Shown: one piece after another, positions 36,987-63,775 of the stretch
Layout of the letters: every line of letters starts with the position of its first letter
Numbering within the stretch: the first letter of the stretch is position 1
From: Diadema antillarum
Taxonomy: Eukaryota
Assembly: GCF_040938485.1 (NCBI RefSeq)
Contig: NW_027270898.1
Coordinates: forward strand, 62,001-126,000
DNA length: 64,000 nucleotides
Direction: 5' to 3'
Position numbers and translations under genes: made by a program
The notes under the pieces: generated by a model
Seen by the model: only the letters and a program-made list of their open reading frames with translations
Told to the model about the DNA's origin: nothing
Databases searched by the model: none

Positions 36987-38399
36987 TTAGACATCGACAT
37001 TGTAGATTGAAGGATCCGTATTTACTGTTATTTTTTCGCTGAATAAAGCTGCTCTACCCGACATGCTAGTGGTCGATTTGAACAATTCTCCTATCGCCTT
37101 GCGAAATTCAGGATTTCGAATAGTGTAAATGACAGGATTTGCGCAGGAATTACAGAAGGCTAAGACATTTAGAGTAGAAAATATAGCGCTGTACAAATAG
37201 GATGCTGGCAAAACACGAAGATTGTACAAGAGATATCCCGTCTGTGCCGGTGTCCACGAGATGAGAAAAACAGCGACAACAAGGAACAGAATCTTGAGAA
37301 CACTTTTTCGAGCTACAAGGTACTTAGATGTCGGGTTTAACTTGTTGCAGTTCAAATCTTCTCCCAACCTTCGGCGGGATTGTCGATGGAGCACCAGTGC
37401 GGTGAGACCCTGGGCTACTAGCATAATGAAAGCCGGTATGAGAAACTGAACGAGGAAAAGCATACAACCTGTCATTAGCTGGGCTAGCTGTGACTGAAAC
37501 ACCTCAATGCACGTGTCGTCCTTTGCGCTAGCAACAAAAAATAAGAAAAAGTTTGCCAAAAACGAAACCATCCATGTTACGGCAACAACTTTGCCAACTC
37601 TCTGCCGTGTTACAAGACGCTTGAAATGAAGAGGATGGGCAATCGCAATGTATCTCTCTATTGGAATTAAGGTCAGAGTGAAAATGGAGGCATCCACTGA
37701 AACCCACATTAACATGGACGTGTAAAGTACCTTGCAGTAGACTTCTCCAAGCCATGTTCCAGGAACCCTGAGTGGCGTAGGCAATGGGATCATGAACACC
37801 GACGTCAAGAAATCCGCAGCGGCAAGAGCACCGATCAGGGCATCAGTGGACCGGCAATTCTTTCGCCTTTGGAATACCACCGAAATTACGGTCAGGTTGC
37901 CCACTATTCCTAACATGGACATTGCTAGTTGCGGAATCGTCACCCATGTCCATGTAACTGGCTGCCACTTCCAAAGCAGCTGGGGAACAGCAGTTTCATC
38001 CTTATTTTCCTGAGTGAAATCCAGCGTAGTAATCTTTGCATTCTGTGTATAGATTTCAGTTTGATTTTCACGGTTGATTCTCAAAACGTTAAAATCCCTT
38101 TGTAGGAATGTCTTTATTGGATCGCTTTTGTCGTGGTGTGGGGTTGTTTCGATGTGAAAATGTATCCTTTCTAATCGAGTAGAAACTGCAACATTGTCTA
38201 AAGGTTGAATATGTGTCGTCGAATTGCCATTGATAACTTCACTGTCTGAATGACTTTTAAAAGTGGCATCTGATGCACCCGTAGCGTTTGGGGTAAAATA
38301 TTGAATAGGCACAGTGGTGACCGGCTGCGCCGTGAGTGTAAGATTGACTGTTCTAGATATGATAAGGAGAACGATCGTCCGAGTTGCCAATGTCCTCAT
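36987..38399 (-). CDS. Class A (rhodopsin-type) orphan GPCR, copy 1, 470 aa (galanin/allatostatin-receptor-like by motif resemblance)
   Basis: Signal-peptide-like start MRTLATRTIVLLII. GN in TM1, LAAAD in TM2, C...ERY in TM3, W in TM4, FLIP in TM5, FLISWTP in TM6, NSCANPVIY in TM7, helix 8 NPEFRKA. Start placed at the ATG shared by the paralogues, not the ORF-track start at 38483, which falls in the inferred intron. Confidence 0.95.
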   Translation of the reverse strand: MRTLATRTIVLLIISRTVNLTLTAQPVTTVPIQYFTPNATGASDATFKSHSDSEVINGNSTTHIQPLDNVAVSTRLERIHFHIETTPHHDKSDPIKTFLQRDFNVLRINRENQTEIYTQNAKITTLDFTQENKDETAVPQLLWKWQPVTWTWVTIPQLAMSMLGIVGNLTVISVVFQRRKNCRSTDALIGALAAADFLTSVFMIPLPTPLRVPGTWLGEVYCKVLYTSMLMWVSVDASIFTLTLIPIERYIAIAHPLHFKRLVTRQRVGKVVAVTWMVSFLANFFLFFVASAKDDTCIEVFQSQLAQLMTGCMLFLVQFLIPAFIMLVAQGLTALVLHRQSRRRLGEDLNCNKLNPTSKYLVARKSVLKILFLVVAVFLISWTPAQTGYLLYNLRVLPASYLYSAIFSTLNVLAFCNSCANPVIYTIRNPEFRKAIGELFKSTTSMSGRAALFSEKITVNTDPSIYNVDV

Positions 38400-38415
38400 T
38401 TTCGTGTGTTTTTTT

Positions 38416-39521
38416 CTGTAAAGAATATGATATAAAAAATAGATGGGATAGGTGTATTTGTCTTTTGTGATATCAGGAATCATTGAAAGCGCATTACCAC
38501 AAAAATCTTACTTTGACTTTGAAAACTTTGTGAAATCATACAAACCGATGAAATGCCATCAAAATGTAAAATCAGACCTCAATGGAATTTCAAAATGGCA
38601 AACGTTTCTTTTCTAAAGAAACAGTGATATTACTTGCTATCACGTATGCAAATCAGATGTTATAATGCCAAGGCATCTTTGGACGATCCGATAAACCATT
38701 ACATTTTCGTTTTTGAAATGAAATCATGAGTCATTTTTTCGTACATTATTGTTTCTTAGCTGTATAAACGAATCAACTCTTTGGCGTTTTGACTGCTGAT
38801 ACACGATTTCGTAAATTTCTGGTTACCAACTAGAAGGAAAGTTCGGAGGTCATGAAGTATTCACTCCATCTACTTATATTTGGTCATTAAGGTTAGGACC
38901 TACATCATTCTTCCATGAAAACACGTAAAAGTTGATTTCATCTGCTCTTTATAATTGAAGTGCCGGATTGTTTTATTTTGACTTCATTGGAATATAGGGG
39001 CGACACTGCATGCATTTTCAGCAGGACACAAATTGATTCGAACTTTACTTTATCAAATGCTGGGATTGCAAGAAGAGAAAAGAGAGAAAGTCGTTAAGCA
39101 AGAAAATTAGACCGACTAGTGAGATCTAATTCTCGCCAAGAAAGCCTTCGGAGGTCTATGAGAAACTAGGGCATCTTTTATGACAACAACTTAGGCAAAG
39201 ATAACTTTACTTCAATTTCTTTGGACACACCTCAAAAATGAAATGAGAATGATATGGTAATCAGCCATTTCCAACTTTAGGCTAGATGCTATAAGCTATT
39301 ATCGTGCTTCACGATGCTATAACCATGTTGTAGAACGTTAGAGCCTAATTTGATTAGAGCTGATTTGCTTAGTTACTTACTTCAAACGCGTTTTAATGAG
39401 TACAATGTATCTATTTCTTCAGGTATTGAAACAATGCTAATTATGTAATATCAATACCGTCTCTGATCAGAGTGATTATTCTATTGTAGGATTGAGCAAA
39501 TTTAACTAAAAAAAATCTTAC
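38416..39521 (-). other. Inferred 5' UTR intron of GPCR copy 1 (1106 bp)
   Basis: Donor CAG|GTAAGA at 39521 and acceptor TTCTTTACAG| at 38416, 16 nt before the ATG. Both positions are conserved in the paralogous units. Confidence 0.7.
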
Positions 39522-39680
39522 CTGAAGCAGCTGACTCCTTAGCACAGATTAGCAATACCTACAAGTCACGTACATCCGCATTTCGTCGTTAAAATGATGT
39601 GTTGGAACTGAAACTTTAAGCTTAAATAGTCCTCATATGATGCGCGTGAGCAGTGCATGGGTTGAAGTCAGCCAATGATA
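39522..39680 (-). promoter_or_regulatory. Inferred core promoter and non-coding exon 1 of GPCR copy 1
   Basis: TATTTAA on the minus strand at 39622-39628, CCAAT (AGCCAATGA) at 39672-39676, exon of about 75 nt ending at the donor. Confidence 0.6.
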
Positions 39681-39727
39681 TCATACGCCAAACATATCTA
39701 GACGGTTTTCCTTTTGAATTACAAACA

Positions 39728-39766
<39 letters not shown>

Positions 39767-51341: not shown

Positions 51342-52917
51342 AGCGGGGTTCCCACTGTCGTATGATCCGTCACAAACGCCACGATTGGACATTCGTAACT
51401 GACTGTGGAAGTTTAGTTGAACTCGTCTAAAATTTCACGTTTGGATACGACGTTATGCGAGTCAATACGTGCTGGTTCGCTTGGAGGCGATATGGTCACG
51501 ATTGGTCTATTTCAAGGAATACGGTTTGTCACGATCTGGTCTCCCGTTCAACAACGATCCTATAGGATTGTCCCGATTGAGTCCACGATTGGTTCCGACC
51601 TACACGATTATTACGATCGGGATACCCGATCTTGTGCGTGCAGCTACGTTCTGATACGTTCCAATTCGAATACTGCGAACTAATGCGGGCTGTTGAGATA
51701 AGATACGATATCTTTCACGATCGGCATCAAAAGCGACCCCCATTTAAGTTGCGATTGGACCTGAATGTCAATATTATACTCCGGCTGACAATGGATTTCA
51801 TTGTTTCCTTAACTTCTGCAGAGTGATTAGGCCTATACAGGTATATACTATCCACAATCATTGATGATGGCAAGGGTTGACAGGTTGAGGATAATGACAA
51901 CGTGACCTTTGCAGTATTGCGAATGACGATTACGTTATCATCAGAGAGAAAGCAGCACCTAGGCCAGCCACAACCTCAGATAGTCCCCCCTCTAACTTAA
52001 CCTAGGAAAGAAATTAATAGACTATTGAATCGACATGCTCATCCTCTCTCCCCCTACCCCCAACCCCCCCTCCCCCCCCCCGAAAACCGACGAATACACA
52101 AGATCAGATCATTGCCCCCTCTTACCCCAGAAAAAAATCAAGACAATTGCTTTCGCCTTCTTTTGAAATATATGAAGGTAATAATGGTGAAATGGAAACT
52201 AAAAAAGAGGATGGGATTTTTATGAATGCTTACATTATGTGTTATATGCGATCAATGTAGGAATTTGGCCGAAATGATAGTATTGCTTGTGTGTTTGATT
52301 TTGTATTCGCATAGTATGTATCATATTATGGCTTTTTATTACAAAGTGTCGTAATCTCATGGGGTATTGAAAGTTTAGTTGGTTTGGCTTGATTTACCGT
52401 TTTATTTAACATTGTTTAAGGAAACCGATATGCACACAACAGAAAATTAACTTTTCTAAAATAATATCACTTTTTAACAAAACCATTGTTTTAAGCAAAA
52501 TTATTTCGTAGGGGTATTGCTACACTTATTGACTAACTTTTATGTGAAAAATAACGACAGCGATCTTTATAGTCCTGTACGAGTGGCAAATGTGCAAAAA
52601 AAAAAAAAAAAAAAACAAGCAGAAGGGAAGTGAAAAGTCGATCCCGATCAACACGATTGAGAAGCAGGTAGATGAGATTTGCTGCGTTTTGATTCGATCC
52701 AAGACAATCTGATGCGATGATCACGATCAAAAATTAATCGTGTTAATCGCAGAAAATGTTTGCACCGTCCAAAACTTTTCTACGATTTACGCGATTGCCA
52801 CGATTAACCTCAAGATCTGATACAATCTAATACGATGTAATAAGATCACCACGATTGCTTCACGATTTAGACCACGATTGCAATCGTGGCGCCAATCGTG
52901 ACAGTGGGAACCCCGCT
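51342..52917. mobile_element. 1576-bp non-autonomous PIF/Harbinger-like DNA transposon
   Basis: TIR AGCGGGGTTCCCACTGTC / GACAGTGGGAACCCCGCT. TAA TSD at 51339-41 and 52918-20. Paralogous units show the empty site (TAAACGTC). Many (C/T)ACGAT subterminal repeats. No transposase ORF. Confidence 0.85.
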
Positions 52918-54076
52918 TAAACGTCATTAATTTCTTAAAGTGATCAATTATATTTCATGCATGTTTTTCTCCTCTGTGAAATTCGATGGATCAAAAAATT
53001 ACTTAATCCCCCCCCCCCCCAAAAAAAAAAAATAAGAAGTCATCTTAGAAGTGTTTATGTATGCTAAAATAACCATTGCGGTATAAAGCAAAATACTTGG
53101 CGAGCTGTGAAAGATCAAGAAGAGTACAGTAAGCTCCTTCCAAGGAACATTCAATAGTGAAAAAAAAATCCTCTCATCCGAGTGGAATCTCGATGGAGTG
53201 TGAGGAATGAGAAATGAAAGTTACGTTTGCGTGTCAGATGTTCCCTCAAGAAATCTCGAAATTCTGCATTTTAACAACTAAAAATATACAAAATATCAAA
53301 AAGGTTGTGATTTTTACAATAGCAGCAGAAAAAACAACAACATTTTTTCAAGCAATTAAGATGAGAATTCAAGGAACAGCACATAAGGTTTGAACACTTT
53401 TTTTTTCCATTACCCACGCTTTGTTTCTTTTGAGTTTAATTCATATTTCACATTTTTGACGCTTTGGTTCTTTTCTCTCCAATACCGATTAATCTATGAT
53501 TTAACATTCTAGATGTGCTGATTCATGTTGTCATGTAGTCCGTGCACGTGTTGTTTGGCGCTAATTCTAATCTGCCTCTCAGAAAACACTAACAATGGGA
53601 TTGAATTAAATTGATGTGAATTGAAGGTGGATCATTCATGTCGAGACTCTCTGGGGCATAAGACCCTAATTTAATGTCTTTAATCTCATACTTATCAACA
53701 CGTTTTAATTGTGTGTTATATGAATGTTTGTTTGGGGTATGGGTATGGTTTTTGCTGTCAGCGACAAAGTATTACATGATCTATACATTTCTTAAACTGC
53801 GGCTTATGTGATATTTTCCAGTTTTGAACAGTTGTTGTTTTTCATAATGATCCTTGATTGATTCATGACTTTTAAATAAACTTCACAAAATGTTAGACTT
53901 AGAAACACTTTAGCGAAGTCTATGCAAAACATGATATGAACCAATTATTTAAATGAAAAGATCCAAATGATTTTTTTAGCAAAATATAACACACTAACTT
54001 AAACTTACTTAAAACTTCAGAGCCTCAGTGAATTTAAGTATTTTTATTTTGTTGATAAACATCTAAGAATATAGAT

Positions 54077-56340
54077 GAATTAATAATAATAATAATAATA
54101 GTGGCTACTTGTATAGCGCACAGGTCCACTTTTCAGTGCTCATGGCGCTTCAAAATGAAAAGATATCATATATTTACATGCATATACATATTCAAACATT
54201 TCAACAAATAAGAAAATGGTAAACAAAAACAAATATATATCAAATAAAGAATACAACATATACCAATTAAAAATACAATATTGATCCAATATTAATGACA
54301 TACAGCAATTACAGTCCTCAGTATGAAAGGAACAGATAAGTTTTAAGTTTGGATTTGAATGACTCTGTAGATGACAGTTCCCTTAACTGAAGAGGTAACT
54401 GATTCCACAATTTTGGTCCCATAACGGAAAAAGCACGATCACCATACCCATGTTTTACTCTGGGTGTTTGGAGTAAGAATGCATCTGATGATGAACGTAG
54501 CCTTCGTGCCGGAATGTATTTTTGAACAGAATTACTTATGTATATTGGGGGAAAAGAATGAACTGAATGATGTACTAATAACAGAATCATGAAAATAATC
54601 CTTTTTTCTACAGGTAACCAATGTAAGGAACGGAGAACTGGTGACATGGAATCAAACTTATTAGTAAAAGTTAACAATCGGGCAGCAGAATTTTGCAACC
54701 GTTGAAGTTTTGTGACATCTTTTTTTGAAAGATTACACAACAATGAATTCGAAAAATCCAACCGAGAAGAAATCAAAGCATGAATAAGTATCTCAGCTGC
54801 AGATTTAGACAAATATTTCCTTATGAAACTTAAATTACGCAACTGATATCGAACATTCCGCTTAATATGAGTTACATGACTTCGAATGACATTTCCTGAT
54901 CAAATATGACACCTAAATTACGGGCTGTTTTCGACGGAGTAATGCAAGTGCTACCGATGTTGACATGACATGACTGATAATCAACTTTGCTTAACATATG
55001 CTTTGATCCCAATAACAGAAACTCAGATTTATCATCATTTAGTTTAAGGCCATTGGATGTAAGCCAGATTTTCAGGTCTTGCAAACATGTTTCGAGTTTT
55101 GCAATGGCGGATGACAATGAAGACACAGTGGGTTAAAAGACAAATATAGTTGTATATCATCCGCATAACAATGATAACTAATACAATGCTTGCGAAATAC
55201 TTCACTAATTGGTTGCATATACAGAGAAAAAAGCAGCGGGCCTCCAACAGAACCTTGAGGTACACCAAACTTTGTCATAGTTTAAGAGGTAGAATCACCA
55301 ATTCTAACATAATGAGATCGATCACATAAGTAGGATATAAACCAATCAAGAACAGTTCCTTTGATGCCCAAATATCTCAATCGTTGAATCAGAATAGCAT
55401 GATCGACTGTGTCAAAAGCTGAGCTCATATCAAGCATGATAAGAGCAGTGATGTTACCACTATCTAATTCTCTGAACACAATATCTGATAAGTTGACTAA
55501 CAGTGTTTCTACACTATGACCAGGCTTGTACGCAGATTGAAAAGAATCAAGTAATTCATTATCTTGCAGATACATTGTCAGTTGTGAGAAAACAACCTTT
55601 TCAAGCAATTTACTTAAATAAGTTAAATTTGAAATTGGGCGGTAATTTTTTAGACACTCCTGATCTAAGCCTGCTTTTTTCAAAGTTGGATGAATAACTG
55701 CTTTTTTACACACCTGTGGAACTACACCTAATCTCAGGCTAGCATTTATGATTCTTGTGATAACGGGTGCTAAAACTCTGCCACACTTCTTAACCAAATC
55801 TGTTGGGATTGGATCAAGTTCACATGATTTGTTAGGTGAGTTCTTAATAAGCTTTTCTATCTCATTAACAGTGACAGACTTAAACTCACTCAATTCTGAC
55901 TTGACTTCACATACAATGTTATTTGGCTGTTCACAACGAGTTGGGAAACTCCGTTGGATTGCCACAATTTTATCAATGAAAAATTGATTAAAACAATTGG
56001 CTAACTCAACTTGATCACCATGAGGGAGGTGTTCTGGCAAAGGAGATCGCTGTTTTCGATAAAGCAAAGCATTAGCAGCTTTGTACAACTTCTTTGTATC
56101 TTTCCCACAATCCGTAACCTTTTTTGAATGATATTGTAACTTAGCATCTTTAATCAAGGCATTTACACATCGCCTTTGTGCATGATACATCTGCTTGTGA
56201 ATCTCCAGTTTTGTGGACCTTGACTTCCTTTCTAACTGTCTACGAAGCAGTTTTGCTTGAGCTATTTCTGGGGTATACCATTCCGTATTGGGGTGTATTG
56301 TGACCTTGATTCGTTTCTCAGGTGCCAACTTATCAATTCG
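54077..56340 (-). mobile_element. 5'-truncated L2 LINE with disrupted ORF2 (reverse transcriptase)
   Basis: Fragments [84 protein letters not shown] and GDRAFSVMGPKLWNQLP. In-frame stop near 55282 and frameshifts. 3' end GCGCC...GCGCTATACAAGT followed by (TAT)n. Confidence 0.95.
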
Positions 56341-56350
56341 CCATGTCTTA

Positions 56351-56828
56351 AATATCTAAACTATGCAAATTTGTATGAGGCAAATAAACACATTTTGTTT
56401 ATGTGGGAGAATGCAATTACAACCGGGGTAGATGAATATTGGTTTATTTCATCATAACAAGAATGATACAAAGCTAATTGCGTGTCATTGCTGTAAATAT
56501 GCACGCAATACAATACAATACAATACAATACAATATTTTTCACATTCAAACCCCCAAAATATGTTCCGTATTATATTTTTTACAAAAAAAATATCTAAAC
56601 TATGCGAATTTGTATGAGGCAAATAAACACATTTTGTTTATGTGGGAGAATGCAATTAAAACCGGTATAGATGGATATTGGTTTATTTCATCATAACAAG
56701 AATGATACATAGCTAATTGCGTGGCATTGCTGTAAATATACACGCAATACAATACAATACAATACAATACAATATTTTTCACATTCATACCCCCAGAATA
56801 TGTTCCGTATTATATTTTTTTACAAATA
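56351..56828. repeat. Two tandem copies of a 239-bp unit containing (CAATA)n
   Basis: AATATCTAAACTATGC starts at 56351 and 56590; the copies are near-identical. Confidence 0.9.
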
Positions 56829-57942
56829 TGATTTTATTCTTAAGAAAAAAAAAACTAACATCAAAAAGTAATACGAAATAAAAGAAATAAAAAATATATA
56901 TACATACATGTATTATACATACTATGGGCCTACATCAGCCCACTACAGCGGTAACATGTGCCAAATTTCATATCAAATGCTCAACAACTGTGGGAGATAA
57001 TCCAATCTACGATACATTTTATACCTTTTACATAAAAAAGGTCACTATGGCAACACATTGCTCAAACATTAAGAAAAAAATCCAATCAAGAAAAATCTTG
57101 TTGATCCTGTGTGTAAGATTCCGAATCAGATACTCAAAACTGTGGGAGTTAGCCAAATGAGCTGATAATCAATTTGTATAATTTCCATTAAAAGATATTG
57201 TTACCATGACAACAAATTGTCTAGCATTGACAAAAACAAATAAAAATAATATTGCGCGAGTAAGATTTTGCAGTCTTCCAAAGATTTTTTCGGTGACGCA
57301 GATCCAAATGAAAAGGGTACCAGAAAATGCTGAGAGGATAATTCTACCAAGACATATTGTGAAACCTTTGATTAGATGTCAATACTTCAAACGAGACAAT
57401 TGTAATTGACGACACTTTTTTTCTGAATCACTGTGTCATATGCAGTACTGATAAGCGCGGTATAAAAAAAAATGCAAAATGCCGCGCTTTAAATAGTAAA
57501 GGACCTAAAGTTCGGGTGATATATTACACTTTCATTTTAGGTCAGAGTTGCAGGCGAGCAAAACATGATGCTGCAGTGAAGTGATATGCAACTTTCCTCT
57601 CTTTGAATCCTTCTTTTCTGTCATTTTCTTATCTGCATTTATAACCAAACAAGAGACACACTGTATAGCGCTTTGCTGATGAGCTTTGAAATTATTACCC
57701 AATCGTTGCAAATAAAAATTAACAGCGCTTACATAATTATGACGTTAAAGCCCGCAAAATGTATCCAAATGAAAATCGGTCAAACAAACCACACATGCTA
57801 TACATATTATATTGTGCACCTAGAGAATTTTGATCGGAGCAATTATATAATAACACTGCACTTCAGTCGGCAGACAACGTAAATTTACAACTCTTCCCGT
57901 GTACTGTGATGCAACACGAAGGCCAAAATGTCGAAAAACTTC

Positions 57943-59017
57943 TTAGACAGCGACATTGTAGATTGTCGAATCTGTATCACATGTTACTTTATCGCTGAGC
58001 AAAGCCGTTCTTCTCGTCGAGTTGGCCGTTGATTTGAGCAATTCTCCTATCGCCTTGCGAAATTCAGGATTCCGAATCGTGTAAATGACTGGGTTTGCGC
58101 ACGAATTACAGAAGGCTAGGACAACTAAAGCTGAATTTAGTGGGCTGTACAAGTAGGTCTCCGGCAGAACACGAAGGTTGTACAAGAGATATACCGTCTG
58201 CGTTGGTGTCCACGAGATGAGAAAAACCGCAACAACAAGGAAAAGAATCTTGAGAACACTTTTCCTAGCCACAAGGTACTTCGCTAACGGGTTTAACTTA
58301 TAGCAATGTGAATCTTCTCCCAGCCTCCGGCGTGACTGTCGATGGAGCAACAGTGCGATGAGACCTTGGGCTACAAGCATAATGTAGGCTGGTATTAGAA
58401 ACTGAACGAGGAAAAGCATACAACCTGAGGTGACCTGGAAAAGCCGTGAATGAAATGTCGCTGTGCACTCGTCGTCTTTAGCACCAGCCACAAAGAACAA
58501 GAAAACGTTTGCCAAAAACGCGATCATCCATGTAACAGCAACAACTTTGATAACTCTCTGCCGTGTTACAAGACGCTTGAAATGAAGAGGGTGGGCAATC
58601 GCAATGTATCTCTCTATTGGAATCAAAGTCAAAATGAAGATGGAGGCATCCACTGAAACCCACATGAGCATTGATGTGTAAACAACCTTGCAGTAGACAT
58701 TCCCTAGCCACGTTCCAGGAACTCTGAGTGGAGTCGGCAGGGGAACAATGAACACTGAAGTCAGGAAGTCCGCAGCGGCCAGAGCACCGATCAGTGCATC
58801 AGTCGACCGGCAATTGTGGCGCCTTTGGAATACCACCAGGATCACGGTCAGGTTTCCTGATATTCCCAGCATGGACATTGCTAGTTGTAGAATAGTCACC
58901 CATGTCCATGTGACTGACTGCCACTTCCAAAGCGGCTGGGGTACTGCAGGCTTTCCCTCATTTTGCGCCGGAAAATTCGGAGTTCTAATCTCTGCAGTCT
59001 CTGTATGGATTTCTGTC
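57943..59017 (-). pseudogene. GPCR copy 4: 7TM region intact, 5' end deleted (probable pseudogene, or N-terminally truncated receptor)
   Basis: Homology to the paralogous CDS stops at about 59017 and jumps to sequence matching 44061 onward, which is intron in copy 2. The native ATG, signal peptide, most of the stalk and the acceptor are missing. An in-frame ATG at 59062-64 lies in former intron sequence. Confidence 0.75.
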
Positions 59018-59996
59018 AAGTAACATTCCTCAATGAAAACAGATACAAAAATGGTAGATGTCATCAAATTTCACCTGCGATTTTCAATGCTGCATTGATT
59101 TATTTAGACTTCATTGATATCCACCTGAACATATGGGGTGCCATTAGATGACTTTTCAGCAGAACACGAATTATTTCAAACTCTCATATTTTTTTTTGTT
59201 AAATGCTCTCCTGCATTAGTGATTGCAAGAGGAGCAAGTAGGTCAGTACGCAAGAAAATTAGACAGACTAGTGAAAGTCAAGAGGCACCAAGAAAGTCTT
59301 TGGAGATCTGTGCGAAATTTACTGCCTTTGAAATAGGCTACACTCTACCAGACATTTTGGCATATCCAAAATTGTGAGCTTCATACAAGAATTTTGATAT
59401 GTCAATACTAAAACACACAACATTGGCTATGACTAAAGATTGACGGGAGCTAATAACAGCTTGATGGCTTTTGTCAGAGTCTACGCTTTGCCAGACCTAT
59501 CAAAATGAAAGTCTTTTGGCCACTTTGGATAATACGTCAACACTATACAGAATAAGATTGGTTTCGACTATAGATTATCTGTTTAGGATTTCTTCTTTAA
59601 AGACATAAATACAAATTCTTATCACAGCATTGAGCTATGTTGTGTTAATTTTGTGATTGGAAAGGTAATTTACTACCATATTCTTATATAAACCTGAAGC
59701 TGACATGAAAATTATAACGTAATTGATCACTTCCGATTTTAGTCTATACTTGTAGGTGTTATAATAAACTATTATCGTGATTAACGACAATGCAACTACA
59801 ACCAGGTTATAGGACGTTATAGCAGAATTAAACTCAGTAGTATACAGTGCCTTACCTCAAAGGCGTCATAACTGCAATGCTTCTGTTTCTTAAGCCCCTA
59901 TTGAGACTATAGAACAGTTATACAATAATCGATACCGTTTCTGATTAAGGCCAATATTCTTATGCACGCATGCGGAAATTATGTGGCAAATCTTAC

Positions 59997-60162
59997 CCGA
60001 GAAGCAAATGACTCCTTAGCAAAGATTAGCAAAATCAGCAGATCACATATACATCCGCATTTCGTTGGAGTGATGTACTAGAAATGCATCTCTTTAGGGC
60101 TTAAATAGTCGTCGTCAAATAATGTCCGTGTGTAGTGGATGATAATGAGTTCAGCCAATAAT
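59997..60162 (-). promoter_or_regulatory. Retained core promoter, exon 1 and donor of GPCR copy 4
   Basis: Donor CGG|GTAAGA at 59996, TATTTAA at 60101-60107, CCAAT at 60155-60159. Confidence 0.55.
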
Positions 60163-62365
60163 ACCAATTCATTCGCCAAACATAATTAAACGTAGTACCT
60201 TTTCACAATACAGACAGACAGACATACACACGCGTGCGCACTCCACAAACATTAGGCCTATAGCGCCGCACGCAGGAACAAAATCACTCATGCACCATAG
60301 CACTGTAAAGTTGACTCAATATAAACAAATCTGTAATCCGGCATTGCAATGTGATAATCACATCGAAGCACAGCCAGGCAAAACACTCGTAAGAAAACAT
60401 CAGTACGTCACTACGCATAACATAAGATGTTCTTGCTTTTAAAAATGAGTTGCATTATTTCACATAAACGTCTTTCATTTCTTAAAGTGATCTATACTTT
60501 ATTTCACATTCTGTTTCTGACCTTAACGAATACAATGTTACGGAATGCAATGGGTCAGTAAAGCATTGACTACCAAGGAAAATAGGAATTTATTCAATGT
60601 GCTAATTTACCCTCAAATCACCATAGCAGTGAGCAAATCTAGTTCGGTAGCTGTGAAAGATTGAGAAGAGTACAGTAATTTCAATCCGTGGAATTTTTGA
60701 TAGTAAAGGAAATCCTATACTCTCTGATTGGAATCTTGAAAGAGTGTGAAGAATGGGAAATTGATGTTAGGTTTACGTGGAGGCGTTCCCTCTAGAAATT
60801 TCAACATTTAGCATTCAACTTAAAACATGCAACGAGTTGTGCCTTTCAAAACAGCAAGGCAAAAGACATCATTCGTGTTAGCAATTAAGACGAGAAGGAA
60901 AGGCCACATAAGTATGAGCATTTCAACATTACTGACTCTTCTTTCTTTTTAGTTCATTGTATACAATTTGCAATATTGATACTTTTCTTCTTTCCCCTCC
61001 AATACCGGTGAGGGAGAAAATATATGCATTCAGACACTAATCGTTTACACGTCTTAATTACGTGTCATATCGATACAAGTTTGGGGTTAGGGGTATGTTC
61101 GCTGCTGTCTGTGTTAAAGATTTTGCTCACTCTATAGGTTTTCCCATCTGCTTAATAGGAGATATTTTCCCATTTTGAATAGTTGTCGGTTTTTCAACAT
61201 TGATCTATGCTTGACTCATGATTTCTAAATGAACTCTACAAAACATGGAGACTCAGAGAAGCACTTTAATGAAATTTCTCCAAAACATAAAGTAAACCAA
61301 AAAAATTAAATGAAAAGAGCCAAATGCGAAATAGAAAGATATCACAATAAGTATACTTATTTGAAAATTTAGAGGCTCAGAGAATATAAGCACTTGATGA
61401 TAAACGTACAAGTGTGTGTGAAACTTTAGTAGTTCTTGAAATACCTTAAATCCTTTGTATTCATATAAAGGAAGATAAATACGTGTTGTTTATGGGAGTG
61501 GGTGGAATAAATGCGGCGTTTTTAAGCCAGAGTGCTTACACTATCTCAGGTAATTCAACACACATTCATTGTCAGTTAAGGTTACACATAAGTTATGCAT
61601 ACTGTTGCAGTGAAGTGGCGTGAGGTGATAACTTTCACATCTCTGGGGTGTTCTTTTCTGCCAGTTTCCTACACTCGATATAATAAGAGAAATAAGTCCA
61701 ACTTTGCACTTTTACGTGTGATGTACAACATCTTTCCGGGTGCAACTTTGCACCGTTTAGACCAGTGAGCACCTTCAATCCTCTCTGTGCCACGTCTATT
61801 TCCTATTCATAGACATGTGTGTGAAATTTGTGCATATTTGACTCTTTGTCACAGAAGGGTTAAGGATGAAACTTTGCCCCATTAAAGGTACTCATTGTTC
61901 AGAAAGGTGCAAAGTTGCATCCGTAATGGTGCTACAATTGTGCCACACATAAATGTGCAAAGTTAACCCTTTTTATATATCTGCATTCATGATCAAACAA
62001 TAGGACAGTTGCTGTAGCGCTCAGCTGGAGCTCTTTAAAATTATTCCCTCATTGTTGCAAACCAAATGAACCACTCATATATCTGCTATAAATCTACACT
62101 CATTACTTCATTGTTGCACTCTTTGCATAACCATAACGCAAAAACATGCCAAGATGTGTCCATGTGAAAAGCAAACCTACAAAACCACTCATATATCTAC
62201 TGGGAATTTAAAAAATCACACATCTACTGTAAATTTAGAAATTGTTGATTGGAGCAATTACTTCAGTTGACGATTATCATAAATACTTAACGTAAGTATC
62301 TAACTCTTCTTATATTTCGCGGTGAAACATGAAGATTTAACAACTGCTTAATGTCGAAATGATTC

Positions 62366-63775
62366 TCAGACAGGAACATCGGAGATTGTCGAAACTGAAT
62401 CGTCTATTTCCTTTCCACCAAACAAAGCCATTTTCCCCGATGTGCTAGTGGTTGATTTAAACAATTCTCCTATCGCCTTGCGGAATTCAGGATTCCGAAT
62501 CGTGTAAATGACAGGATTTGCGCAAGAATTACAGAAAGCTAGGGTAACTAGAGCGGAACTTAGAGGGCTGTACAGATAGGACTCTGACAAAATACCAAGG
62601 TTGTACAGGAGATATCCCGTTTGAGGCGGTGTCCACGAGATAAGAAAAACCGCAACAACAAGGAACAAAAGCTTTAGAGCATTCTTCCTAGCCACAAGGT
62701 ACTTTACTGATGGGTTTGAGTTATTGAAGTTTGAACTTTCTCCTAGCCTCCGGCGGGATTGTCGATGGAGCACCAATGCCGTGACAGCCTGGCCTACAAG
62801 CATGATGAAAGCTGGTATGAGAAATTGAACGAGGTAAAGCATAATCCCTGAGATAATCTGGACAATTCGTGACTGAAATACTTCGGTGCACTTGTCGTCC
62901 TTAGCACTAGCCACAAAGAATAGGAAAACGTTCGCTAAAAACGCGGCCAGCCATGTCATGGCAACAGCTTTGCCAACCCTCTGCCGTGTTACAAGACGCT
63001 TGAAATGAAGAGGGTGGGCAATCGCAATGTATCTCTCTATTGGAATCAATGCGAGAATGAAGATGGAGGCATCCACTGAAATCCACATGGGCATCGATGT
63101 GTAAATAACCTTGCAGTAGACATCCCCTAGCCATGTTTCAGGAACCCTGAGTTCCGTAGGCAGTGGGACCATGAACACTGATGTTAAGAAATCCGCAACG
63201 GCTAAAGCAGCGATCATTGCATCAGTCGACCGGCAAGTGTAACGTCTTTTGAATAACACGAGGATCACGGTCAGGTTTCCTACTATTCCCAGCATGGACA
63301 TTGTTAGTTGCAGAGTCGTCACCCATGTCCATGTAACTGACTGCCACTTCCAAAGCACCTTGGGAACAGCAGATTCTTCCTCATTTTGCTTGGTGAAATT
63401 TGGCGGACTAAAATCTGCAGTGTCCGTTATTAATTCTGTGTGATTTTCACGGTTCATTTTAGAAATGGTAAAATCGTTTTGTGGGAATGCTTTCATTTGG
63501 ACGTTATCATTGTGCTGTCGGGTTGTTTCGATATGTAAATAGTTCTTTTCAAACTGAGTAGAGACTGAAGCATTATCTAAACGTTGGGCAAATGTCGTCA
63601 AATTGCTGTGAATGACCTCGATGGTTGAATTACATGTAGAATTAACAACCTGTGCCCTCGTAGTGGTTGAGGAAGAGTATTGAACGGCCGTAGTCCTAAC
63701 CGTCTCCGCTGTGACTGTAAGACGGACCGCTTTAGTTATGATAAGGAGAACGATCATTCGAGTTGTTGACCACAT
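62366..63775 (-). CDS. Class A orphan GPCR, copy 5, 469 aa
   Basis: Intact ORF with all 7TM motifs. Acceptor TAATACAG|G at 63793. Exon 1 and promoter would lie beyond the window. Confidence 0.95.
   Translation of the reverse strand: MWSTTRMIVLLIITKAVRLTVTAETVRTTAVQYSSSTTTRAQVVNSTCNSTIEVIHSNLTTFAQRLDNASVSTQFEKNYLHIETTRQHNDNVQMKAFPQNDFTISKMNRENHTELITDTADFSPPNFTKQNEEESAVPKVLWKWQSVTWTWVTTLQLTMSMLGIVGNLTVILVLFKRRYTCRSTDAMIAALAVADFLTSVFMVPLPTELRVPETWLGDVYCKVIYTSMPMWISVDASIFILALIPIERYIAIAHPLHFKRLVTRQRVGKAVAMTWLAAFLANVFLFFVASAKDDKCTEVFQSRIVQIISGIMLYLVQFLIPAFIMLVGQAVTALVLHRQSRRRLGESSNFNNSNPSVKYLVARKNALKLLFLVVAVFLISWTPPQTGYLLYNLGILSESYLYSPLSSALVTLAFCNSCANPVIYTIRNPEFRKAIGELFKSTTSTSGKMALFGGKEIDDSVSTISDVPV

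What the first reader, a model, noticed from the sequence alone, without database searches (positions are those of the whole stretch)
36987..63775. Five-copy tandem array of orphan class A GPCRs: candidate lineage-specific chemoreceptor cluster undergoing birth and death
Seen: five same-strand paralogues with intron-free CDS. Whole units, including intergenic DNA, are duplicated (stop-to-stop 5219, 5430, 10307 with TE insertions, and 4423 with a deletion). Cytoplasmic motifs are nearly invariant while ECL2, the top of TM5 and the top of TM7 vary. Known: sea urchins and sea stars have large expansions of clustered, mostly single-coding-exon rhodopsin-type receptors proposed as chemosensors, and such genes are often auto-labelled galanin/allatostatin-like. 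Inference: these are not orthologues of neuropeptide receptors but a diversifying sensory family. The array may continue past the right edge.
Basis: partly seen in the sequence, partly recalled or inferred. Interest (0 to 1): 0.72.

Follow-up and report, generated by a model that had tools for sequence, protein, structure and literature searches.

The report
Sea urchin orphan receptor gene array
The five receptor genes are the first five of at least 42 related, head-to-tail genes found only in Diadema sea urchins. It is a typical, still changing sea-urchin "orphan receptor" expansion whose smell-or-taste role is plausible but untested.

Summary
Five same-strand, single-ORF class A GPCR genes lie at the stated coordinates, with the stated stop-to-stop spacings, and their intergenic DNA is duplicated too.

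The window is Diadema antillarum contig C10:62001-126000. The array runs on for about 370 kb. It holds 42 core-family copies, 34 intact and 8 broken or truncated, plus 5 more distant copies out to 563 kb. All are on one strand.

The core family forms a Diadema-only clade. It has several one-to-one D. setosum partners and no neuropeptide-receptor orthologue. The public label "TAAR9-like" fails, because no copy has Asp3.32.

Selection is purifying but weak. Omega is 0.38 in the 7TM core, 0.22 in the cytoplasmic loops plus helix 8, and 0.50 in ECL2 plus the tops of TM5 and TM7, against 0.36 elsewhere. No site shows robust positive selection.

The two retained haplotypes of the sequenced animal differ in copy number and in which copies are intact, so birth and death is seen directly.

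[quoted passage not shown] The scan has noted other such arrays in this genome. Verdict: a new member of a known kind.

The parts
36987..38399 (-). Copy 1: intact single-ORF class A GPCR of 470 aa counted from the conserved start Met. The mechanical ORF reaches an upstream ATG at 38483.
   Evidence: the allele on haplotig C344 is intact
42206..43609 (-). Copy 2: intact GPCR, 467 aa. Layout: signal peptide 1-23, disordered Cys-free glycosylated ectodomain 24-139, Trp-rich motif 140-150, 7TM 151-422, helix 8, tail ending in a hydrophobic-Asp-Val motif.
   Evidence: (AF2, pLDDT above 90 in the 7TM)
47636..49045 (-). Copy 3: intact GPCR, 469 aa from the conserved Met. Nearest window paralogue is copy 5 (dS 0.18).
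57943..59064 (-). Copy 4: N-terminally truncated copy. It has a 373-aa ORF from an ATG in formerly upstream DNA, no signal peptide or ectodomain, and an unbroken 7TM frame. It is sister to copy 6 just outside the window and is absent from the other haplotype.
59018..59022 (.). Junction of the ~786-bp deletion that removed copy 4's first ~110 codons and ~457 bp upstream (equivalent to 43281-44066 of unit 2).
62366..63775 (-). Copy 5: intact GPCR, 469 aa. It pairs with D. setosum protein P0005 in the tree.
55282..56328 (-). Truncated reverse-transcriptase ORF (retrotransposon fragment) inside the 10.3-kb unit.
   Evidence: RVT_1, E 1e-13, profile positions 3-106 of 205
56350..56826 (.). Two tandem copies of a 239-bp unit next to the retrotransposon fragment.
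50949..51203 (.). Dispersed repeat insertion, 93% identical to 25861-26111 in inverted orientation. It is absent from the other haplotype.
53493..59612 (.). A 6.1-kb segment, holding the retrotransposon fragment and the copy-4 coding sequence, that is present on this haplotype and missing from haplotig C344.

Best explanation
SHOWN.
- The five genes are the 3'-most members of a tandem, single-strand array of at least 42 paralogous, single-coding-exon class A (rhodopsin-type) GPCR genes. The array lies on D. antillarum contig C10, about 99-466 kb, roughly one gene per 9 kb.
- Each intact gene encodes a signal peptide, a ~115-aa cysteine-free, N-glycosylated ectodomain predicted to be disordered, an almost invariant Trp-rich motif (WKWQSVxWTWVT) just before TM1, and a canonical 7TM core. 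The core has the TM3-ECL2 cysteine pair, ERY, W6.48/P6.50, NPxxY and helix 8.
- The family is restricted to Diadema within a wider echinoid-only radiation.
- It grows by duplication of whole ~5-kb units and shrinks by deletion, frameshift and truncation. Both processes are still segregating between the two haplotypes of one animal.
- Constraint is strongest on the G-protein-facing side. It is weakest in the ectodomain (omega about 0.9-1) and relaxed around the top of TM3, TM4, ECL2 and the top of TM5, which in solved class A receptors line the ligand pocket (established knowledge).

INFERRED.
- The copies share one conserved signalling output and differ in ligand recognition.
- Like the sea-urchin surreal-GPCRs and the starfish OR-like genes, they most likely act as a receptor repertoire for external chemical cues.
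- Copy 4 is a dying or dispensable member.
For: Array extent and strand. Intact and broken tally. Unit-level homology.

Domain layout.

Echinoid-only hits above E 1e-39, then a drop to E 6e-14 (fish TAAR13c-like, 30% identity). A Diadema-only core clade (SH-aLRT 100) with six one-to-one D. antillarum/D. setosum pairs. D. setosum has the same tandem layout, three copies in 21 kb with one frameshifted.

Codon-model omegas: whole gene 0.545, 7TM 0.38, ectodomain 0.89, intracellular loops plus helix 8 0.22. 124 sites are under significant purifying selection. Allelic pN/pS is 0.45.

Haplotype differences: copy 4 is missing on C344; an extra 6.4-kb unit sits on C10 and a frameshifted copy on C10 is intact on C344. 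The assembly retains both haplotypes (PMC13511894).

Known kind: surreal-GPCRs and starfish OR-like genes are clustered, independently expanded, and found mostly in tissues that touch the environment (PMC5442662, PMC7042368).
Against: There is no expression evidence: no RNA run was listed, so sensory-tissue expression is untested. No ligand is known for any echinoderm receptor of this kind (PMC7042368).

Positive selection is not demonstrated. 18 sites have beta above alpha at p<0.05, about what 467 tests give by chance, and the smallest p is 0.0009.

The extracellular/cytoplasmic contrast is modest, and the share of significantly constrained sites is about the same on both sides (36% against 38%, tallied).

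Most duplications are older than the Diadema species split and have one-to-one partners. That also fits stable receptors for internal signals.

The closest solved folds are peptide receptors.
Confidence: 0.6

Rival explanations
1. The copies are receptors for endogenous, lineage-specific signals, such as fast-evolving neuropeptides, gamete or spawning factors, or immune or damage cues, rather than for environmental odorants.
For: The fold and the best sequence matches are peptide receptors: CCK1R, orexin, nociceptin, kisspeptin and GALR1. ECL2 is a beta-hairpin as in peptide receptors. Many copies have one-to-one D. setosum partners and omega below 1. Starfish OR-like genes are also expressed in the nerve plexus and internal tissues (PMC5442662).
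Against: [quoted passage not shown] The 7TM omega of 0.38 is higher than I would expect for a conserved peptide receptor (my own knowledge, not measured here). No orthologue was found outside echinoids.
Confidence: 0.25
2. They are true trace-amine-associated or aminergic receptors, as the public annotation 'TAAR9-like' implies.
For: NCBI product names. TAAR9 is the fifth-best solved match, E 1.7e-22.
Against: The residue aligned to Asp3.32 is Leu, Pro, Phe or Lys in all 34 intact copies, never acidic. CCK1R scores better than TAAR9. The fish TAAR13c-like proteins fall in the outgroup with an adrenergic receptor. The TM7 TAAR fingerprint is absent (read from the sequence; the motif is from my own knowledge).
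Confidence: 0.02
3. They are one-to-one orthologues of a conserved bilaterian neuropeptide receptor (galanin/allatostatin-A, CCK or QRFP type) that merely happen to be duplicated.
For: More distant paralogues carry such automatic labels. GALR1, CCK1R and QRFPR are among the structural neighbours.
Against: Identity to these receptors is only 19-25%. All 99 echinoid sequences form one clade apart from the nine non-echinoid sequences used as outgroup (SH-aLRT 100). The outgroup included TRH-receptor-like, GHSR-like, pyrokinin-receptor, adrenergic, TAAR13c-like and a starfish somatostatin-receptor-like protein.
Confidence: 0.03
4. The array is largely non-functional, decaying duplicated DNA, or an assembly artefact.
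For: Eight of 42 copies are broken. The ectodomain evolves at omega near 1. The assembly is an uncollapsed diploid draft.
Against: 34 copies keep open frames of 447-474 codons. The 7TM omega is 0.38, with 124 sites under significant purifying selection. Allelic pN/pS is 0.45. Two independently assembled haplotigs carry the same genes in the same order. D. setosum has the same array.
Confidence: 0.03

Closest known systems
Surreal-GPCRs of Strongylocentrotus purpuratus (Raible et al. 2006, as cited in PMC5442662 and PMC7042368)
   Same: Rhodopsin-type receptors that expanded independently in echinoids and sit in tandem clusters. The papers read here treat them as candidate chemoreceptors. The nearest non-Diadema relatives of this family are Lytechinus and S. 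purpuratus proteins.
   Different: This subfamily is Diadema-only in my sample. Which surreal group (A-F) it falls in could not be determined, because the Raible paper and its sequences are not held. The long, near-neutrally evolving ectodomain and the Trp-rich motif before TM1 are not mentioned in the passages I retrieved from the two papers I searched.
Acanthaster planci OR-like receptors (ApORs; PMC5442662) and holothurian OR-like genes (PMC7042368)
   Same: Clustered class A receptor expansions in echinoderms with no known ligand. Tandem neighbours are each other's closest relatives.
   Different: No starfish or sea-cucumber protein appeared among the close hits. The best starfish hit has 24% identity. 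These are therefore parallel expansions, not the same family.
Vertebrate odorant receptor and TAAR gene clusters
   Same: Single-coding-exon class A genes in large same-strand tandem arrays, with pseudogenes and copy-number polymorphism. The parts that vary most here line the ligand pocket in solved class A receptors.
   Different: No orthology: 25-30% identity, and they fall in the outgroup of the tree. There is no Asp3.32. The long signal-peptide-led ectodomain is not an OR or TAAR feature (my own knowledge).
Peptide receptors of the CCK / orexin / opioid / galanin group
   Same: The best sequence and fold matches. A beta-hairpin ECL2 and the ERY and NPxxY motifs.
   Different: Only 19-25% identity and no one-to-one orthology. 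TM3 has two extra residues between the conserved Cys and ERY compared with CCK1R and TAAR9.

Membership tests
Class A (rhodopsin-type) GPCR | Match to Pfam 7tm_1 above the gathering score over the whole profile | tested here: met
   125-141 bits against a cut-off of 30.5, profile positions 1-260 of 260, in all five copies
Class A (rhodopsin-type) GPCR | Microswitch motifs: E/DRY, W6.48-x-P6.50, NPxxY, the TM3-ECL2 cysteine pair, N1.50 and D2.50 | tested here: met
   ERY and Cys219 are invariant in all 34 intact copies. In the five window copies SWTP, NPVIY, N1.50, D2.50 and Cys294 are invariant. Across 72 relatives N165, D193, N415 and Y419 are invariant, and C219, C294, W376, P378 and P416 are at least 90% conserved.
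Class A (rhodopsin-type) GPCR | Seven-helix fold | tested here: met
   AF2 model with pLDDT above 90 across the 7TM. Foldseek probability 1.00 and target-normalised TM-score 0.7-0.83 to many class A receptors.
Echinoderm expanded 'OR-like' / surreal-GPCR kind | Lineage-restricted, independently expanded clade with no one-to-one bilaterian orthologue | tested here: met
   All hits better than E 1e-39 are echinoid, then a gap to E 6e-14. The echinoid clade and the Diadema-only core clade both have SH-aLRT 100.
Echinoderm expanded 'OR-like' / surreal-GPCR kind | Tandem genomic clustering of mostly single-coding-exon genes | tested here: met
   At least 47 same-strand matches on one contig, with single ORFs from signal peptide to stop. 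The D. setosum gene model P0002 spans exactly 1353 bp for 450 aa plus the stop.
Echinoderm expanded 'OR-like' / surreal-GPCR kind | Assignment to one of Raible's groups A-F | not testable with these tools
   The paper and its sequences are not held. The supplement of PMC7042368 does not list the S. purpuratus relatives.
Echinoderm expanded 'OR-like' / surreal-GPCR kind | Expression in tube feet, pedicellariae, spines or other tissues that touch the environment | not testable with these tools
   No RNA run was listed for this stretch, so no reads could be laid.
Trace amine-associated receptors / aminergic receptors | Asp at position 3.32, which binds the ligand's amine | tested here: not met
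   The TAAR9 (8itf) Asp aligns to Pro227 of copy 2. That column reads L27 P4 F2 K1 across the 34 intact copies, and neither neighbouring column holds an acidic residue.
Trace amine-associated receptors / aminergic receptors | Groups with vertebrate TAARs in a tree | tested here: not met
   The two fish TAAR13c-like proteins group with an adrenergic receptor in the outgroup.
Galanin / allatostatin-A (or CCK, QRFP) receptor orthogroup | One-to-one orthology with the bilaterian receptor | tested here: inconclusive
   Everything seen argues against it: 19-25% identity to GALR1, CCK1R and QRFPR structures, more than 40 paralogues, and an echinoid-only clade. But no curated GALR/AstA-R or CCKR sequence set was available to put in the tree.

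The most novel reading that the evidence does not exclude
The N-terminal module may be a working part of a new receptor design rather than a spacer. The module is a signal peptide, then a ~115-aa Cys-free glycosylated ectodomain evolving at omega near 1, then an almost invariant Trp-rich WxWx(3-5)WxW segment. AF2 models that segment confidently, with a short strand in it. The motif occurs in most full-length echinoid relatives and in none of the nine outgroup receptors. The Trp-rich segment could act as a built-in lid or tethered element over the pocket, with the variable ectodomain capturing large or surface-bound ligands such as microbial, algal or conspecific glycoconjugates. That would set this echinoid superfamily apart mechanistically from odorant-type receptors.
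Probability: 0.12. Interest if true: 0.65.

Novelty: new member of a known kind. Interest (0 to 1): 0.35.

Why it matters
Diadema antillarum is a keystone reef grazer hit by repeated die-offs. Its settlement, feeding, aggregation and spawning are thought to depend on chemical cues, yet neither genome paper I searched mentions GPCRs.

This locus provides a well-defined candidate repertoire of 34 intact genes at known positions. It has a clean family signature and shows copy-number and intactness differences between the two haplotypes of one animal. It also shows that the public names ('TAAR9-like', 'QRFP-like') are misleading and that many public gene models cut off the N-terminus.

For receptor evolution it is a tidy example of birth and death. 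It adds little that is conceptually new beyond the S. purpuratus surreal-GPCRs.

Tried and rejected
- RNA evidence: the look-up of sequencing runs listed no RNA run, so read laying could not be used. Expression, transcription start and any 5' non-coding exon stay untested.
- Ancestral-state counting of substitutions (SLAC-like): the machine refuses ancestral sequences. I did not work around this. I used codon models by region and my own fixed-effects site test, which sums over ancestors. That test reproduces IQ-TREE's log-likelihood (-21371.097).
- Omegas for short segments are unstable. For the top of TM4 they were 1.0 with free branch lengths and 0.5 with fixed ones, so I do not rest on them.
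- Surreal group assignment: the Raible paper is not held, and the holothurian paper's supplement does not list the S. purpuratus relatives.
- Atlas search of the ectodomain gave only chance-level scores of 0.79 or less.
- Pfam found nothing in two further ORFs of the long unit. A call with unsuitable coordinates failed.
- The large exhaustive protein search was not run. It returns no taxa, and the word search already showed the gap between echinoid and other hits.
- TAAR, one-to-one neuropeptide-receptor and junk/artefact readings were rejected (see the rival explanations).


Full report
OBSERVATION

Stop-to-stop spacings are 5219, 5430, 10307 and 4423 bp, exactly as written. All five match Pfam 7tm_1 across the whole profile (E 1e-36 to 1e-41). 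They are 67-78% identical in protein. tblastn finds no further copy or fragment in the window, and nothing left of 36987 resembles the units. So the window holds the left end of the array, which is its 3' end in gene orientation.

Unit-against-window blastn shows that the intergenic DNA is homologous too, at 67-82% identity. The long unit carries a truncated reverse-transcriptase ORF (55282-56328, RVT_1), a 239-bp tandem duplication and a dispersed repeat at 50949-51203. The short unit lacks about 786 bp compared with unit 2. The missing stretch is the first ~110 codons plus ~457 bp upstream. Copy 4 therefore has no signal peptide or ectodomain, but its 7TM frame is unbroken.

WHERE IT IS AND HOW BIG IT IS

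Protein hits place the window in Diadema antillarum. A search of the window's own genome gives its address as contig C10:62001-126000.

That search changes the picture. The same family continues on the same strand from C10:98,990 to 466,296, with five more distant members out to 563 kb. That is at least 47 matches, and it is a lower bound because only the best candidates were scored.

I fetched every copy on C10. Of the 42 core-family copies, 34 have an open frame of 447-474 codons running from a conserved start Met and signal peptide to the C-terminal tail. The other 8 are truncated, frameshifted or lack the start.

Contigs C344 and C519 mirror C10 copy for copy at about 98-99% identity. The published analysis of this 1.75-Gb assembly shows that it retains both haplotypes: 84% of BUSCOs are duplicated and each phased haplotype is about 0.9 Gb (PMC13511894; preprint). 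I therefore read C344 and C519 as the other haplotype.

BIRTH AND DEATH, SEEN DIRECTLY

Three differences separate the two haplotypes of this one animal.
- Window 53493-59612, which holds the retrotransposon fragment and the whole coding sequence of copy 4, is missing from C344.
- C10 carries an extra 6.4-kb unit. Its gene (C10:163185) is a near-copy of its neighbour (dS 0.024, similar to the pooled allelic value of 0.027), and C344 lacks it.
- The copy at C10:169745 is frameshifted on C10 but open on C344.

Other young pairs have dS of 0.05-0.08.

The five window genes are old by comparison. Their pairwise dS is 0.18-0.59. A D. antillarum/D. setosum orthologue pair has dS 0.09, and copy 5 pairs with a D. 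setosum protein in the tree.

D. setosum has the same layout: three same-strand copies in 21 kb, one of them frameshifted.

Copy 4 is sister to copy 6, which lies just outside the window. Their 7TM omega is 0.18, so the truncation of copy 4 is recent, or the short form still works.

WHAT THE PROTEINS ARE

The AF2 model of copy 2 has pLDDT above 90 throughout the 7TM. It shows:
- an N-terminal hydrophobic helix (residues 4-23, a signal peptide by position);
- a stretch modelled with very low confidence (most of residues 23-117 have pLDDT below 50);
- a confidently modelled Trp-rich segment just before TM1;
- seven helices, a beta-hairpin ECL2 and helix 8.

The ectodomain is nearly free of cysteine, carries 0-6 N-glycosylation sequons and is about 20% Ser plus Thr.

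ERY and the TM3 cysteine are invariant in the 34 intact copies. SWTP, NPVIY and the ECL2 cysteine are invariant in the five window copies. The corresponding residues are invariant or at least 90% conserved across 72 relatives.

The best solved relatives, by sequence and by fold, are peptide receptors: CCK1R, orexin, nociceptin, kisspeptin and GALR1, at 19-25% identity.

The public name 'trace amine-associated receptor 9-like' does not hold. The residue aligned to TAAR9's Asp3.32 is Leu, Pro, Phe or Lys in all 34 intact copies.

Many public gene models start at an internal Met, some in the middle of TM1 (the 311-aa models). The N-terminus is therefore under-annotated.

PHYLOGENY

I built a tree of 108 proteins (IQ-TREE, LG+G4, SH-aLRT support; quick search, so treat deep nodes with care). 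All 99 echinoid sequences fall in one clade apart from nine non-echinoid receptors. The core array family forms a clade of Diadema sequences only (support 100). It contains six one-to-one D. antillarum/D. setosum pairs and no Lytechinus or Strongylocentrotus member.

In the word-based database search, every hit better than E 1e-39 is echinoid. The next hit is a fish TAAR13c-like protein at E 6e-14. No one-to-one neuropeptide-receptor orthology is visible. I could not add curated GALR/AstA-R sets, so that particular membership test stays formally inconclusive.

SELECTION

Codon models (GY+F3X4) on the 34 intact copies gave these omegas:
- whole gene: 0.545
- 7TM core: 0.38
- signal peptide: 1.19
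- ectodomain: 0.89
- extracellular halves of the helices: 0.40
- extracellular loops: 0.47
- cytoplasmic halves of the helices: 0.36
- intracellular loops plus helix 8: 0.22
- C-terminal tail: 0.59

I also wrote a fixed-effects likelihood grid, which reproduces IQ-TREE's log-likelihood. Its results:
- The ectodomain cannot be told apart from omega 1.
- The extracellular side exceeds the cytoplasmic side (0.42 against 0.30, p 0.016).
- A zone chosen after seeing the data (TM3 top, TM4, ECL2, TM5 top) reaches 0.60 against 0.30.

Site by site, 124 codons are under significant purifying selection. Only 18 have beta above alpha at p<0.05, about what chance gives over 467 tests, and none survives correction. 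Allelic pN/pS is 0.45.

The family is therefore functional, weakly constrained, and most relaxed where class A receptors bind their ligands. Positive selection is not shown.

The open ectodomain frame does not need selection on its own residues. Any stop or frameshift there would also cut off the 7TM behind it (inference).

WHAT IT MOST LIKELY DOES

The signalling face is conserved and the ligand-facing half is variable. There are dozens of paralogues, with pseudogenes and copy-number polymorphism, and the family is restricted to one genus. This profile matches the sea-urchin surreal-GPCRs and the starfish and sea-cucumber OR-like genes. Those genes are clustered, independently expanded, found mostly in tube feet, pedicellariae, spines and other exposed tissues, and still without known ligands (PMC5442662, PMC7042368).

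I therefore read the array as a Diadema-specific receptor repertoire for external chemical cues, with a confidence of about 0.6. The main rival is a set of receptors for endogenous lineage-specific signals, at about 0.25. Its support comes from the peptide-receptor-like fold, the old one-to-one orthologues and the lack of any expression data. No RNA run was listed.

NOVELTY

Neither D. antillarum genome paper mentions GPCRs, and I found no paper on Diadema chemoreceptors. The kind, however, has been known since 2006. Earlier notes of this scan record other echinoid-specific GPCR arrays elsewhere in this same genome. This is a new member of a known kind, of moderate interest.

The least expected feature is the N-terminal module, in particular the WxWx(3-5)WxW motif. 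It is present in 33 of the 39 array proteins tested and in most full-length echinoid relatives, and in none of the nine outgroups. Its role is unknown.

Noticed in passing
window 42206-43609 (residues 140-150 of copy 2) and all array copies: A Trp-rich motif (WKWQSVxWTWVTIPQL) lies directly before TM1. It is near-invariant in the array. As WxWx(3-5)WxW it also occurs in Lytechinus and S. purpuratus relatives, but in 0 of 9 non-echinoid receptors. AF2 models it at pLDDT ~90 with a short strand in it. It could serve as a signature of the echinoid superfamily; its function is unknown.
   Followed up: partly
C-termini of the array proteins, e.g. window 36987-37013 and 42206-42232: Most intact copies end in ...S-T-I-Y-N-V-D-V (hydrophobic-Asp-Val). 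This looks like a PDZ-ligand-type tail, which would suggest scaffolded localisation. Several copies have lost it through early stops or short extensions.
   Followed up: no
window 5979-7193 (minus strand): A 404-aa Ser/Pro-rich ORF sits in a GC-rich island (51% GC against ~35% around it). It has no Pfam match and only chance-level Atlas hits. It is probably an exon of an unrelated gene that flanks the array.
   Followed up: partly
window 51396-52918 against L031:4069-6278 (C344): At this point the other haplotype carries a 2.2-kb insertion that is an inverted, 79-83% identical copy of the neighbouring intergenic DNA. The intergenic spacers are structurally unstable as well.
   Followed up: no
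public gene models P0001, P0003, P0005, P0007-P0013: NCBI models of these genes are 311 or 363 aa long and start at internal Mets, some inside TM1. The conserved ORF starts ~105-155 codons further upstream with a signal peptide. The product names (TAAR9-like, QRFP-like) are not supported.
   Followed up: partly
TM3 of all copies (copy 2 residues 219-246): There are 27 residues between the conserved TM3 Cys and the Arg of ERY, against 25 in CCK1R and TAAR9. Both alignments open two one-residue gaps. A variable Asp/Gly/Cys lies mid-helix at residue 233.
   Followed up: no
L007 against L008 (copy 1 alleles) and L054 against L026: Allelic pS is 0.077-0.092 for these two pairs, against 0.003-0.03 for the other eleven. 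This may reflect deep haplotypes, gene conversion or wrongly paired paralogues.
   Followed up: no
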